Source: Octopus bimaculoides (Eukaryota). Taken from it: 59,044 nucleotides of DNA. The notes below the pieces were generated by a model that saw only the letters and a program-made list of their open reading frames with translations, did not search any database and was not told the DNA's origin. The first letter of the stretch is position 1, and every line of letters begins with the position of its first letter. Positions 36,777 through 38,464 of the stretch are shown piece by piece. The stretch is from assembly GCF_001194135.2 (NCBI RefSeq), contig NC_068982.1, positions 187,070,605-187,129,648 of the forward strand. Direction: 5' to 3'. A program made the translations under genes and the position numbers.

Positions 36777-36977
36777 TCAAATGCTGCTAGTCTTTGGCTG
36801 CCATCCATCCTCAGTAACCAAAAATGTCAGGTAATCTTGAGATTCATCCAAAAAGGCGTTGGCAATGTTTGCTGCCACCTCACTGTGCTGAAGTCCCACC
36901 AGGCAGGTGCCATTCACTTCCAACAGTATATTGCCCACCTTCAGGTCGGTTTTGGAGTAAAATGTGGAACCATTCGG
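36777..36977 (-). CDS. WHRN: Whirlin/PDZD7-like PDZ gene, terminal coding exon (PNGSTFYSKTDLKVGNILLEVNG...DYLTFLVTEDGWQPKTSSI*)
   Basis: Acceptor tttcttttgcag at 36978. LKVGxxxLEVNG...H.E.A..IA.AF...DY..FLVTE resembles the recalled whirlin PDZ3. Orthologue versus paralogue is unresolved. Confidence 0.88.
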   Translation of the reverse strand, partial: PNGSTFYSKTDLKVGNILLEVNGTCLVGLQHSEVAANIANAFLDESQDYLTFLVTEDGWQPKTSSI

Positions 36978-37164
36978 CTGCAAAAGAAACCAAAAAAAGA
37001 AAAAGATTAATTTCAAAGTCAGATCATCTCAAATATAAGAAACGAAACATTACCACTTGGTTATTAACCCTTTCATTACCAACCTGGCTGAAACCATCTT
37101 TTGCTCTGCGTACAAACGTTTTCAACTTGGATTAAACAAATAGTTACAATAGAGAATGTCTTAC

Positions 37165-37311
37165 CTGGATTGCAAACACTCGAGGAAACATCTGACTGGA
37201 ATTGATGCCACCCTCAATGGCCAAACCTAAAGTTGGCATCACTTTATAAATGACAACTTCTTGCAGTGGGATATTGCCATAGGTTTTCTTTAATCTTTTC
37301 TCTTTCTGTTC
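37165..37311 (-). CDS. WHRN: Whirlin/PDZD7-like PDZ gene, internal exon (EQKEKRLKKTYGNIPLQEVVIYKVMPTLGLAIEGGINSSQMFPRVFAIQ)
   Basis: 147-nt phase 0-0 exon, tttcag acceptor, gtaaga donor. TLGLAIEGG..PRV..IQ matches the recalled whirlin PDZ3 carboxylate-binding loop. A 187-bp intron follows. Confidence 0.9.
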
Positions 37312-37874
37312 CTGAAATTGAAAATGTATTTTTAAGTGACAAATACTTTCTTAGCATTTAAAATGTGGTTGTTTAGCCCCAGGTCAGCCCTGGTCAAATA
37401 AATGCACATCTATTATCAAAAGTATTCCGTCAGTGACCATCCTGTCTTTCTGTATATCTAGTTCAACATTATTGAATGTGTCCTTCTCTCATCTTAGGAT
37501 GCAGGCATTTCTGCATCATTGCATATTGTTAACAACAAAAACTATACACAAATTTTTATTGTTCCTATAAATATGAACTATCATTGTTATTGGGGCTGTG
37601 AAAGAGAAATGCGTGTGTCCTACAAACACATGAATGATGTCAGTCATAGCCCAATGTGCTTACACACATTTTGTTTGTGAGGAGAATTTTCTCCCAGAAC
37701 CATTTCTACAGCAAAGGGTCTTCTCACTTCTGATTGTATTCAAATATGTGAAATACTGTTGTACATGATTTGCATTAATTACGAAATGGTAACGAGTAAA
37801 AATTTTGTAAATATAATTATAAGCTTTCACTGTATACTGACTATAGAAGATAGTTTAATATTAGAGCATACAAT

Positions 37875-38215
37875 GTATGTATGTGTGTATGTATGTATGT
37901 ATGTATATATGTATATATGTATGTATGTATGTACGTATGTATGTATGTATGTATGTATGTACATATGTATGTATGTATGTACATATGTAAGTATGTATGT
38001 ATGTACATATGTACGTATGTATGTATGTACATTACATATGTACATATGTATGTACTTACATACGTATGTATGTATGTGTGTATGTATGTACATACATATG
38101 TATGTATGTATGAAAATTCTTGTATGTATGTATGTATGTATGTATGTACGTATATATGTATGTACGTACGTATGTATGTATGTATGTATGTACGTATGTA
38201 TGTATGTATGTATGA
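37875..38215. repeat. Long interrupted (TATG)n microsatellite in a PDZ-gene intron
   Basis: Direct inspection. Confidence 0.95.
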
Positions 38216-38353
38216 ATGAATGAATGATTGTGATTAATGAATGAATGATTGTGATGATTGTCCAACTCATGCCAGCATGGAAAGTGGATGTAAAAGTATG
38301 ATGATTAAGGATTGATGATAAAAAAAAGAAACAGACACATTCTAGGAACTCAC

Positions 38354-38464
38354 CTTAGTTTCAGGACGTTTTTCAAGGAATTTAGTTGTACAGGAACAGA
38401 TGTTATTTCCCATTGACCTCGGGTCAAAGGTCAGTACTGTCCATTGACCCTTTCTTCTGTTGAT
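38354..38464 (-). CDS. Upstream exon of the PDZ gene; open frame INRRKGQWTVLTFDPRS-MGNNICSCTTKFLEKRPETK, probable start ATG at 38413
   Basis: 111-nt exon with strong acceptor (ctttctccttttag) and gtgagt donor. Only frame 0 is open, and it joins the next exon in phase. Confidence 0.7.

What the first reader, a model, noticed from the sequence alone, without database searches (positions are those of the whole stretch)
36777..38413. Candidate 135-aa lipid-anchored single-PDZ protein (whirlin PDZ3-like) beginning MGNNICSC
Seen: three exons with canonical splice sites join in phase. The only in-frame ATG in the 38354-38464 exon (38413) gives MGNNICSCTTKFLEKRPETKEQKEKRLKK, then a complete PDZ domain, then a stop (60+147+201 nt). 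Established: Gly2 with a small residue at position 6 is the N-myristoyltransferase consensus; nearby Cys and a basic cluster are the usual second membrane-anchoring signals; whirlin is normally a large multi-PDZ scaffold with no lipid anchor known to me. Inference: this is a stand-alone membrane-tethered PDZ adaptor or an internally initiated short whirlin isoform. No PDZ1, PDZ2 or HHD exon was recognised in the ~20 kb upstream, though about a quarter of that is N.
Basis: partly seen in the sequence, partly recalled or inferred. Interest (0 to 1): 0.75.

Follow-up and report, generated by a model that had tools for sequence, protein, structure and literature searches.

The report
Lipid-anchor-motif, PDZ3-only whirlin of cephalopods
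This is a real octopus gene, conserved across cephalopods, that makes a 135-residue protein holding only the last PDZ domain of the hearing and vision scaffold whirlin behind a start (Met-Gly plus nearby cysteines) that fits a fatty-acid membrane anchor; the gene model is already in RefSeq, and the anchor is a prediction.

Summary
Three minus-strand exons (38464-38354 with ATG at 38413; 37311-37165; 36977-36777) have canonical AG/GT sites and join in phase 0. They give the 135-aa ORF MGNNICSC...TSSI. The window is Octopus bimaculoides, and the protein equals RefSeq XP_014778177.1/XP_014778178.1 'whirlin'. The domain is a whirlin PDZ3: PDB E about 1e-19, and the AF2 model matches whirlin PDZ3 crystal structures at 0.9-1.5 A.

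The stretch between the acceptor and the ATG is open only in this species. O. vulgaris and Argonauta have in-frame stops there, and there is a 16-nt indel. Spliced cuttlefish transcripts with two different 5'UTRs have stops 4 and 9 codons upstream of the same ATG. Conservation begins at Met-Gly. All four cephalopod genera or species groups fit the N-myristoylation pattern and keep a Cys at positions 5-8, although exon 1 is otherwise only 35% conserved.

No PDZ1, PDZ2 or HHD exon lies within 20-26 kb upstream. Synteny with AP-3 mu and a shared intron position place the gene at the 3' end of the ancestral whirlin locus.

Lipidation itself, and whether a long whirlin still exists upstream, remain untested. 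I rate this a new variant of a known kind, of moderate interest.

The parts
38414..38464 (-). 5' untranslated part of the ATG exon. It runs from a splice acceptor (AG at 38466-38465) that is conserved across octopods down to the start codon.
   Evidence: The acceptor ttttag|atc is conserved in O. vulgaris, O. sinensis and Argonauta. This stretch has a 16-nt indel and in-frame stops in sister species, so it is not coding. It contains a non-conserved 6-codon uORF at 38444-38424.
38354..38413 (-). First coding segment, residues 1-20 (MGNNICSCTTKFLEKRPETK), ending at a phase-0 donor AAG|gtgagt.
   Evidence: Orthologous 60/54/60-nt segments start with ATGGG in all cephalopods examined.
38390..38413 (-). 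Predicted dual-acylation motif M-G2-N-N-I-C6-S-C8. Gly2 would take myristate; Cys6 and Cys8 would take palmitate.
   Evidence: Fits G-{EDRKHPFYW}-x(2)-[STAGCN]-{P} in O. bimaculoides, O. vulgaris, Argonauta (MGNNSCSC) and cuttlefish (MGTSCSG). The chiton MGQNMDK does not fit. Attachment of lipid was not tested.
37312..38353 (-). Intron 1 (1042 nt), with a (CATA)n-type microsatellite at about 37880-38250.
   Evidence: Read directly. Intron length differs among Octopus species: the CDS span is 1.6 kb here, 2.5 kb in O. sinensis and 3.7 kb in O. vulgaris.
37165..37311 (-). Coding exon 2, residues 21-69. It holds a K/E-rich helix (about residues 20-31), the conserved KxYGNIPL motif and the first half of the PDZ domain, including the carboxylate-binding loop T47-L-G-L-A51.
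   Evidence: Homology to long mollusc whirlins starts here, at about residue 18-20. The same exon end (..VQ|PGGS) is found in the chiton. Invariant T47, L48, G49, A51, E53, G54, G55.
36978..37164 (-). Intron 2 (187 nt), phase 0, inside the PDZ domain.
   Evidence: The position is shared with the Liolophura whirlin-like gene.
36777..36977 (-). Coding exon 3, residues 70-135 plus TGA (36779-36777). It holds the second half of the PDZ domain (alphaB His100) and a short tail.
   Evidence: His100 is invariant across whirlin PDZ3 sequences.
36810..37266 (-). PDZ domain proper, residues about 36-125, interrupted by intron 2.
   Evidence: Pfam PDZ at its gathering score. AF2 pLDDT is 84-96 over this range. 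The Foldseek top 11 hits are all whirlin PDZ3, with TM (target) 0.82-0.95 and rmsd 0.9-1.8 A.
36780..36788 (-). C-terminal -S-S-I, resembling a class I PDZ-binding motif.
   Evidence: -TSSI here, -TSSL in O. vulgaris, -TSTL in Argonauta, but -IGTK in cuttlefish. Function not tested.

Best explanation
The three exons are the complete coding region of a small cephalopod gene, or transcription unit, that sits where the 3' end of the ancestral whirlin locus was.

Transcription starts at one or more non-coding 5' exons further upstream. These were not located in octopus; in cuttlefish one lies 15 kb upstream. They splice to the acceptor at 38465. Translation starts at ATG 38413.

The product has three parts: a disordered 15-residue head, a K/E-rich helix with net charge +4 to +6, and one whirlin-PDZ3-type domain with an intact peptide-binding groove.

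Inferred mechanism: Met1 is removed and N-myristoyltransferase acylates Gly2 during translation. Cys6/Cys8 (Cys5 in cuttlefish) are then palmitoylated at a membrane. With the basic stretch, this holds the PDZ domain on the cytoplasmic face of a membrane. There it captures C-terminal or internal PDZ-binding motifs of partners. For vertebrate whirlin PDZ3 the known partners are myosin-15a, harmonin, CASK and taperin.

It would thus act as a membrane-anchored one-domain adaptor rather than a multi-PDZ scaffold.

Shown: the exons, the start codon, conservation, the fold and the locus orthology. Inferred: the acylation, the membrane location and the ligands.
For: - Exons, phases and ORF.
- Identity to RefSeq/UniProt O. 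bimaculoides entries. Two XP accessions carry the same 135-aa protein in O. bimaculoides and two in O. sinensis. None of the source names listed for these entries points to a longer product (my reading of the names).
- Orthologues of 133-135 aa in O. vulgaris, Argonauta and cuttlefish.
- Start codon: in-frame stops or frame-breaking indels upstream in every other species. Cuttlefish spliced RNA contigs with two different leaders both have in-frame stops upstream of the same ATG.
- Myristoylation pattern met in all cephalopods and Cys kept at positions 5-8, while exon 1 is otherwise only 7/20 identical between octopus and cuttlefish.
- Src-family precedent. Lck is myristoylated at Gly2, which is required for palmitoylation at Cys3/Cys5. 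Fyn can be palmitoylated on Cys3 and Cys6: PMC7655920.
- Whirlin PDZ3 identity by sequence (E about 1e-19) and by fold. Binding-loop residues and His100 are invariant.
- The N-terminal 15 residues are predicted disordered (pLDDT below 50), as expected for a flexible lipidated tether.
- Locus orthology. AP-3 mu is the next gene in octopods, cuttlefish and chiton. In the chiton the PDZ3 gene lies 1 kb downstream of the whirlin N-terminal gene. The intron position in the PDZ domain is shared.
Against: - No experiment or dedicated predictor was available, so acylation rests on a loose consensus. By my rough estimate about 1-2% of random N-termini would fit it.
- A G after ATG is also favoured for translation initiation, so Gly2 could be conserved for that reason.
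- Position 7 is Ser/Gly rather than the Lys often seen in strong substrates.
- The Kozak -3 base is T (C in cuttlefish), which is weak.
- No octopus transcript was available. Expression in octopus is inferred from RefSeq models and from cuttlefish RNA.
- The chiton short form also begins MG but fails the pattern (Asp at position 6). The motif is therefore not demonstrably ancestral.
- The cephalopod PDZ domain is more diverged than other mollusc PDZ3s (GGINSSQMFP against GGANTRQPLP, plus a one-residue insertion). Ligand specificity may differ from that of vertebrate whirlin.
Confidence: 0.6

Rival explanations
1. The protein is the same, but it is an internal-promoter isoform of a still intact long whirlin gene. 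The PDZ1/PDZ2/HHD exons would lie more than 20-26 kb upstream, and their long transcripts would skip the MG exon and join exon 2. This would be comparable to WHRN-S alongside WHRN-L in mammals.
For: Mammalian WHRN makes N-terminal, long and C-terminal short isoforms from one gene, and WHRN-S coding begins partway through exon 6 (PMC4859837). Long whirlins in Haliotis, Potamilus and Argopecten run continuously into sequence homologous to exon 2. In the chiton the MG exon lies only 1 kb after the last annotated exon of the N-terminal gene, on the same strand. Cephalopod introns are long: 15 kb and 12 kb in the cuttlefish gene.
Against: The source names for the 135-aa product in O. bimaculoides and O. 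sinensis carry no isoform label, which I read as no longer isoform being attached. No whirlin N-terminal exon was found in 20.6 kb (octopus), 10 kb (O. vulgaris, O. sinensis, Argonauta) or 26 kb (cuttlefish) upstream of the ATG. No cephalopod protein appeared among the 120 best hits of two whirlin N-terminal searches. Those searches were demonstrably lossy, though: one search did not return the protein its query was cut from, and one search did not return two of its query members.
Confidence: 0.35
2. The 135-aa protein is real but is not lipidated. It would be a soluble cytosolic one-PDZ adaptor or competitor, and Met-Gly would be conserved only because ATGG favours initiation.
For: The consensus is permissive, and no assay was run. 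The chiton MG form fails the pattern. The Kozak -3 base is weak, so +4 G may matter.
Against: Three separate features are all kept across the octopod-decapod split, in a segment that is otherwise only 35% identical: Gly2, a small residue at position 6 and a nearby Cys. An adjacent net-positive stretch is conserved as well.
Confidence: 0.25
3. The ATG exon is only an internal coding exon of a long whirlin ORF, read through INRRKGQW..., and the MG start is an accident of this species.
For: In O. bimaculoides the frame is open for 17 codons from the acceptor to the ATG. That happens by chance in roughly four cases in ten.
Against: O. vulgaris has an in-frame TGA. O. sinensis is frame-shifted by a 16-nt indel. 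Argonauta has an in-frame TGA. Cuttlefish transcripts have stops 4 and 9 codons upstream.
Confidence: 0.03
4. It is a decaying remnant (pseudogene) of the whirlin 3' end, or a gene-prediction artefact.
For: The cephalopod PDZ domain is more diverged than other mollusc PDZ3 domains.
Against: The ORF is intact and the splice sites canonical in five species. The only coding indel keeps the frame. Binding-site residues are invariant. Spliced transcripts were recovered from three cuttlefish sequencing runs.
Confidence: 0.02

Closest known systems
Whirlin (WHRN/DFNB31), third PDZ domain; solved structures 1UFX, 6Y38, 6Y9N-Q, 6KZ1
   Same: Best sequence match (E 3e-19 to 1e-18, about 46-48% identity) and best fold match (rmsd 0.9-1.5 A). 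The carboxylate-binding loop and alphaB His are conserved. The domain sits at the C-terminal end of the protein. The locus is orthologous by synteny and by intron position.
   Different: No HHD1, PDZ1, PDZ2, HHD2 or proline-rich region. The product is 135 aa instead of about 900-1050. It has a private 20-residue N-terminus with an acylation motif. The vertebrate C-terminal -NVML/-NVAL tail is replaced by -TSSI.
Mammalian short C-terminal whirlin isoform WHRN-S (PMC4859837)
   Same: A product that lacks PDZ1/PDZ2 and keeps PDZ3, made from a start internal to the ancestral gene. In mouse it localises and functions differently from the long form.
   Different: [quoted passage not shown] It is not known to be lipidated; my literature search for whirlin plus myristoyl found nothing relevant. 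It reaches stereocilia tips by EPS8 and myosin-15 dependent transport, not by a membrane anchor.
N-terminally lipidated splice variants of PDZ scaffolds: GRIP1b and GRIP2b/pABP-L (palmitoylated alternative N-termini). PSD-95 is cited from my own knowledge.
   Same: The principle is the same: a short alternative N-terminal exon of about 18-19 residues adds a lipid anchor to a PDZ protein and changes where it works (PMC6365469).
   Different: Those are seven-PDZ or three-PDZ scaffolds with palmitate only. Here there is one PDZ domain and a Gly2 myristoylation motif in addition to the Cys residues.
SH4-type dual acylation motif of Src-family kinases (Lck MGC.C, Fyn Cys3/Cys6) and G-alpha subunits
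   Same: Met-Gly start with Cys within the first 8 residues. Cys at position 6, as in Fyn. Basic residues follow (for Lck and Fyn; sequence).
   Different: There is no Cys at position 3, which is the main palmitoylation site in Fyn and Lck. The attached module is a PDZ domain, not a kinase or GTPase. Acylation has not been shown here.
Liolophura sinensis (chiton) 155-aa 'whirlin-like' XP_064616824.1
   Same: A PDZ3-only product whose first coding exon begins with MG (MGQNMDKNKSK). It lies between the whirlin N-terminal gene and AP-3 mu. The last two exons share boundaries with the octopus gene.
   Different: It fails the myristoylation pattern (Asp at position 6) and has no Cys. It has an extra 22-residue exon. 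The N-terminal whirlin gene is only 1 kb upstream, so it may simply be an isoform or a split annotation.
Mytilus coruscus shell 'whirlin-like protein' WLP, 147 aa (PMC7141649)
   Same: A small single-PDZ mollusc protein that carries the name whirlin-like.
   Different: According to the paper, its PDZ domain is at residues 18-91 and its relatives are PDLIM/ZASP proteins. The resemblance is in name only. I could not compare the sequences directly.

Membership tests
Whirlin family (orthologue of the WHRN locus) | C-terminal PDZ domain of the whirlin PDZ3 type | tested here: met
   PDB sequence hits to whirlin PDZ3 at E 3e-19 to 1e-18; the next family, GRIP1, is at 2e-8. The Foldseek top 11 hits are all whirlin PDZ3.
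Whirlin family (orthologue of the WHRN locus) | Orthologous genomic position and gene structure | tested here: met
   AP-3 mu is the adjacent gene in four cephalopods and in the chiton, where the PDZ3 unit directly follows the whirlin N-terminal gene. The phase-0 intron at ..VQ|P.GS is shared.
Whirlin family (canonical multi-PDZ scaffold) | HHD1-PDZ1-PDZ2-HHD2 module N-terminal to PDZ3 | tested here: not met
   The module is absent from the ORF. tblastn with nine long or N-terminal whirlins finds only exons 2 and 3 in the 59-kb window, in 10 kb upstream in three other species, and in 26 kb upstream in cuttlefish.
Mammalian-type WHRN-S isoform | Product covers the C-terminal part of whirlin from mid-gene onward (coding starts partway through exon 6), not PDZ3 alone | tested here: not met
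   Only about 35 residues precede the PDZ domain, with no proline-rich segment. WHRN-S definition from PMC4859837.
N-myristoylated proteins (NMT substrates) | Genuine initiator Met followed by Gly2 | tested here: met
   Upstream stops and frame-breaking indels in four other species and in transcripts.
N-myristoylated proteins (NMT substrates) | Consensus G-{EDRKHPFYW}-x(2)-[STAGCN]-{P} | tested here: met
   Matches in O. bimaculoides, O. vulgaris, Argonauta and cuttlefish. Fails in the chiton. The pattern is recalled from PROSITE PS00008 and is permissive.
N-myristoylated proteins (NMT substrates) | Covalent myristate on Gly2 | not testable with these tools
   Needs metabolic labelling, mass spectrometry or an in vitro NMT assay.
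Dual-acylated (myristoyl + palmitoyl) membrane anchors | Cys close to the myristoylated Gly | tested here: met
   Cys6 and Cys8 in octopods; Cys5 and Cys13 in cuttlefish. Palmitoylation itself was not testable.
PDZ domains with a canonical peptide-binding groove | x-Phi-G-Phi carboxylate-binding loop, and His at alphaB1 | tested here: met
   T47-L-G-L-A51 and His100 are invariant in the alignment with mollusc, nemertean and vertebrate whirlin PDZ3. The model is confident here, with pLDDT 89-96. Ligand binding was not tested.

The most novel reading that the evidence does not exclude
Cephalopods have dismantled whirlin. The multi-PDZ N-terminal module would have been lost or separated, and only PDZ3 kept. 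It would be re-equipped with a myristoyl/palmitoyl anchor, and in octopods with a PDZ-ligand-like tail. A cytoskeletal scaffold would thus have become a membrane-resident mini-adaptor for Usher-type or myosin-15-type partners in microvillar sensory cells such as statocyst hair cells and rhabdomeric photoreceptors. The MG-initiated exon in a chiton hints that an internal MG start for a PDZ3-only product may be old in molluscs.
Probability: 0.2. Interest if true: 0.6.

Novelty: new variant of a known kind. Interest (0 to 1): 0.45.

Why it matters
Whirlin is studied almost entirely as a long multi-PDZ scaffold of vertebrate hair cells and photoreceptors. Its short C-terminal isoform already shows that PDZ3 can act on its own.

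A PDZ3-only form that is conserved across cephalopods, and probably fixed to the membrane by lipids, would be a natural minimal version of that module. It shows which part of the protein is kept when the rest is gone. It offers a simple handle (135 aa, one domain, G2A/Cys mutants) for asking what whirlin PDZ3 does at membranes.

It also adds a case to the small list of PDZ proteins whose location is set by an alternative lipidated N-terminal exon.

For genome annotation, the case shows two things. The name 'whirlin' on this octopus protein hides the absence of about 85% of the canonical protein. Cuttlefish models of 190-254 aa for the same gene are artefacts.

Tried and rejected
- **Upstream extension of the ORF through INRRKGQW.** Rejected by cross-species frames.
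- **Search for PDZ1/PDZ2/HHD exons.** tblastn in the window and in four related loci found nothing beyond exons 2-3.
- **Two database searches with whirlin N-terminal queries to find a cephalopod long whirlin**. No cephalopod was among the 120 hits listed. One search did not return P0008, the protein the query was cut from, nor the known bivalve long whirlins P0007 and P0010. One search did not return P0007 and P0010, which were part of its query alignment. The absence therefore says little.
- **Single-sequence AlphaFold run.** The model was useless (pLDDT 35) and was replaced by an alignment-based run (pLDDT 82.8).
- **Weak Pfam hit to PT-HINT** (E 0.0036, 18 bits against a cut-off of 27.7). 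Rejected as noise.
- **Cuttlefish 5' leaders against the window by blastn.** No credible similarity, so the octopus 5' exon was not located.
- **Argonauta against the window upstream region.** No conserved non-coding island was found.
- **ORFs of 70 aa or more in the 20 kb upstream.** These look like repeats and retroelement remnants. Four were tested and have no Pfam family.
- **Literature.** Nothing on myristoylated whirlin or on cephalopod whirlin. The run accessions of the cuttlefish contigs are not mentioned in any held paper.
- **Mytilus 'whirlin-like protein'.** It turned out to be PDLIM-like.
- **Cuttlefish proteins P0004-P0006 (224-254 aa) and P0003 (190 aa).** Rejected as true lengths. 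The first three read TGA as Trp. The last adds predicted upstream exons that are non-coding in the transcripts.
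Full report
**What is in the sequence.**
On the minus strand there are three exons with canonical splice sites.
- 38464-38354: acceptor ccttttag|ATC, donor AAG|gtgagt.
- 37311-37165: acceptor tttcag|GAA, donor CAG|gtaaga.
- 36977-36777: acceptor ttgcag|CCG, ending in TGA.

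The only in-frame ATG of the first exon is at 38413. From there 60+147+201 nt give a 135-aa protein, MGNNICSCTTKFLEKRPETK / EQKEKRLKK...VFAIQ / PNGST...EDGWQPKTSSI. All junctions are phase 0. One small correction: N makes up 14.3% of the 20,580 bases upstream, not a quarter.

**Identity of the organism and of the protein.**
The 135-aa sequence is identical to XP_014778177.1/XP_014778178.1 'whirlin [Octopus bimaculoides]' and to UniProt A0A0L8GTL7. The window is thus O. bimaculoides, and the model is already public.

Close orthologues are a 135-aa protein in O. vulgaris and O. sinensis (98% identical) and a 133-aa protein in Argonauta hians (81%). There is also a cuttlefish protein, seen both in a genome model of Acanthosepion pharaonis and in three assembled RNA contigs.

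The two RefSeq accessions per species carry the same protein and no isoform label. I read this as transcript variants differing only in untranslated parts, with no longer isoform attached. That is an inference from the naming.

**The domain.**
Pfam reports a PDZ domain exactly at its gathering score. Against solved structures, the four best hits are all whirlin PDZ3 (1UFX, 6Y9N, 6Y38, 6KZ1) at E 3e-19 to 1e-18. The next protein, GRIP1, is at 2e-8.

An AlphaFold model built on a 12-sequence alignment has mean pLDDT 82.8. Residues 1-15 are disordered, residues 20-31 form a helix, and a confident PDZ fold covers 36-125. The 11 best Foldseek matches in the PDB are all whirlin PDZ3, with rmsd 0.9-1.8 A, target TM 0.82-0.95 and 45-48% identity. 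PDZD7 PDZ3 follows.

The carboxylate-binding loop (T47-L-G-L-A51) and the alphaB His100 are invariant across mollusc, nemertean and vertebrate whirlin PDZ3. The groove therefore looks able to bind ligand. The PDB entries name the known ligands of vertebrate PDZ3: myosin-15a, harmonin a1, CASK and taperin motifs.

**Where translation starts.**
In O. bimaculoides the frame is open from the acceptor to the ATG (INRRKGQWTVLTFDPRS). In the other species it is not.
- O. vulgaris and O. sinensis have 16 extra bases there, which breaks the frame.
- O. vulgaris has an in-frame TGA 15 codons upstream of the ATG.
- Argonauta has an in-frame TGA 13 codons upstream.

The acceptor itself (ttttag|atc) and the context ggtcaATGGGAAATAAC are conserved in all octopods. 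Inside the coding part, the only indel (Argonauta) is 6 nt and keeps the frame.

The cuttlefish RNA contigs are spliced across all coding exons when mapped on the A. pharaonis genome. The 5' exon is at L009 9835-10572. The 66-nt ATG exon is at 25965-26030. The next exon is at 37924-38076. The last exon is near 40745-40945 by tblastn.

Two contigs share one leader, and the third has a different leader joined to the same ATG exon. Both leaders have in-frame stops, 4 and 9 codons upstream of ATG. Hence Met-Gly is the true N-terminus, and the ATG exon is preceded by non-coding 5' exons.

The longer database 'proteins' of cuttlefish are artefacts. P0004-P0006 read TGA as Trp. P0003 adds predicted exons from the non-coding leader.

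**The N-terminal motif.**
Octopus and cuttlefish share only 7 of 20 residues in exon 1 (35%). They share 76% in exon 2 and 65% in exon 3. What is kept in exon 1 is:
- Met1-Gly2;
- an uncharged residue at position 3;
- Cys or Ser at position 6;
- a Cys at positions 5-8 (MGNNICSC, MGNNSCSC, MGTSCSG);
- the final ETK.

All four cephalopod sequences fit the pattern G-{EDRKHPFYW}-x(2)-[STAGCN]-{P}, which I recall from PROSITE. The first 31 residues carry 9 Lys/Arg against 3-5 Asp/Glu.

The arrangement resembles Src-family SH4 motifs. Lck is myristoylated on Gly2, which is required for palmitoylation of Cys3/Cys5. Fyn can be palmitoylated on Cys3 and Cys6 (PMC7655920).

This is good circumstantial support for a myristoyl-plus-palmitoyl anchor, but it stays a prediction. 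The pattern is permissive. A G at +4 also helps initiation. No assay or dedicated predictor was available.

**Relation to whirlin proper.**
Long whirlins of 917-1052 aa, with two N-terminal PDZ domains and PDZ3 at the C-terminus, exist in Haliotis, Potamilus and Argopecten. Their similarity to the octopus protein begins at about residue 18-20, that is at exon 2. It includes the motif K.YG(N/D)IPL just before the domain. Exon 1 is private to the short form.

tblastn with nine long or N-terminal whirlins finds only exons 2 and 3. This holds in the 59-kb window, in the O. vulgaris, O. sinensis and Argonauta loci (10 kb upstream each) and in the cuttlefish locus (26 kb upstream of the ATG).

**Locus orthology.**
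The gene downstream is AP-3 mu. Its last two coding exons are at 2928-2996 and 33534-33599 on the plus strand. It runs convergent to the whirlin-like gene, with 3.2 kb between the stop codons. The neighbour called in the three octopod loci and in cuttlefish has the same adaptor mu-subunit domains and a similar length.

In the chiton Liolophura sinensis the order is: whirlin N-terminal gene (544 aa), 1 kb, a 155-aa PDZ3-only gene, then a 418-aa gene with the same adaptor mu-subunit domains. The last two coding exons of the chiton gene have the same boundaries as octopus exons 2 and 3.

So the cephalopod gene is the 3' end of the ancestral whirlin locus, not a retrocopy or a distant paralogue.

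The chiton short form also starts with MG (MGQNMDKNKSK), on a tiny exon of its own. It lacks Cys and fails the myristoylation pattern. Whether the two MG exons are homologous cannot be decided from 11-20 residues.

**What could not be settled.**
I could not determine whether cephalopods still have the N-terminal part of whirlin, and if so whether it is spliced to exon 2. Two searches with whirlin N-terminal queries listed no cephalopod among their 120 best hits. One search did not return P0008, the protein its query was taken from, nor the known bivalve long whirlins. One search did not return two of its own query members, P0007 and P0010. The absence therefore carries little weight.

Mammals show that one whirlin gene can give N-terminal, long and short C-terminal products with different roles (PMC4859837). 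The isoform reading therefore stays open, at about one in three.

**How it most likely works.**
Shown:
- a conserved 133-135-aa product starting at Met-Gly;
- a flexible head, a charged helix and one whirlin-type PDZ domain with an intact groove.

Inferred:
- co-translational myristoylation of Gly2, then palmitoylation of the neighbouring Cys;
- stable but regulatable attachment to the inner face of a membrane;
- capture there of proteins with PDZ-binding motifs.

In octopods the protein's own C-terminus (-TSSI, -TSSL, -TSTL) looks like a class I ligand. It might allow self-association or binding to other PDZ proteins. The cuttlefish tail (-IGTK) does not look like one.

The nearest functional parallels are GRIP1b and GRIP2b/pABP-L. 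In these, an alternative N-terminal exon of 18-19 residues adds palmitate to a PDZ scaffold (PMC6365469). PSD-95 is a further parallel from my own knowledge.

**Novelty and verdict.**
The gene model is known, but nothing has been written about its truncated nature or its N-terminal motif. Searches for whirlin with myristoyl, octopus or cephalopod found nothing relevant. The 'whirlin-like protein' of Mytilus shell is a PDLIM-type protein (PMC7141649).

I rate this a new variant of a known kind: a whirlin derivative reduced to PDZ3 with a probable dual lipid anchor. Interest is moderate (0.45). It would rise if acylation were shown and if the long form proved to be absent from cephalopods.

Noticed in passing
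window 2928-2996 (+) and 33534-33599 (+): These are the last two coding exons of an AP-3 complex mu subunit gene (E 5e-21 to human AP3M1 structures). They are separated by a 30.5-kb intron. The gene is convergent with the whirlin-like gene, with 3.2 kb between the two stop codons. A gene with the same adaptor mu-subunit domains is the neighbour in O. vulgaris, O. sinensis, Argonauta and cuttlefish, and on the same strand in a chiton.
   Followed up: yes
window about 37880-38250 (intron 1 of the gene): A long (CATA)n/(TACA)n-type microsatellite fills a third of intron 1. The ATG-to-stop span varies from 1.6 kb here to 2.5 kb in O. sinensis and 3.7 kb in O. vulgaris.
   Followed up: partly
window 42793-42890; L004 2906-4351; L005 1-1145: A roughly 50-bp unit is present about twice in the window. 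It is expanded into a tandem array of more than 1.4 kb in O. vulgaris and is also repeated in O. sinensis, about 4.4 kb upstream of the ATG.
   Followed up: no
window 39480-39707 (-), 49929-50672 (+), 51462-52100 (+), 55190-55545 (+): These ORFs resemble tails of non-LTR retrotransposon proteins (for example ...RRMRWLGHVSRMEDGIIPKD...). Much of the 20 kb upstream also matches several other places in the window, so it looks like dispersed repeats. Pfam gave no significant family for the four ORFs tested.
   Followed up: partly
window 36780-36788 (-): The octopod proteins end in -TSSI, -TSSL or -TSTL, which fits a class I PDZ-binding motif. The cuttlefish orthologue ends in -IGTK, which does not. 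This may allow self-binding or head-to-tail contacts in octopods only.
   Followed up: partly
window 38424-38444 (-): A six-codon upstream ORF (ATG GAC AGT ACT GAC CTT TGA) lies in the 5' leader of the ATG exon. Its ATG is AAG in O. vulgaris and O. sinensis, so it is not conserved.
   Followed up: yes
L007 1-19273 and L008 (Liolophura sinensis CM072732.1): RefSeq splits the chiton whirlin locus into a 544-aa N-terminal gene and a 155-aa PDZ3 gene that starts 1 kb downstream on its own MG exon (L007 10001-10033). The last exon of the N-terminal model carries the DSGV..NG motif, which in long whirlins lies about 100 residues before PDZ3. A long read-through isoform may therefore exist but be unannotated.
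   Followed up: partly
L001-L003 (cuttlefish RNA contigs) and P0003-P0006: Database proteins of 190-254 aa for the cuttlefish orthologue are artefacts. The three contig-derived ones continue past the TGA stop as if it coded Trp. The genome model adds exons from a leader that is non-coding in the transcripts.
   Followed up: yes
window, whole: The window contains 6,056 N (10%) in twelve gaps of 135-932 bases, typical of a scaffolded short-read assembly. Any 5' exon lying in a gap would be invisible.
   Followed up: no
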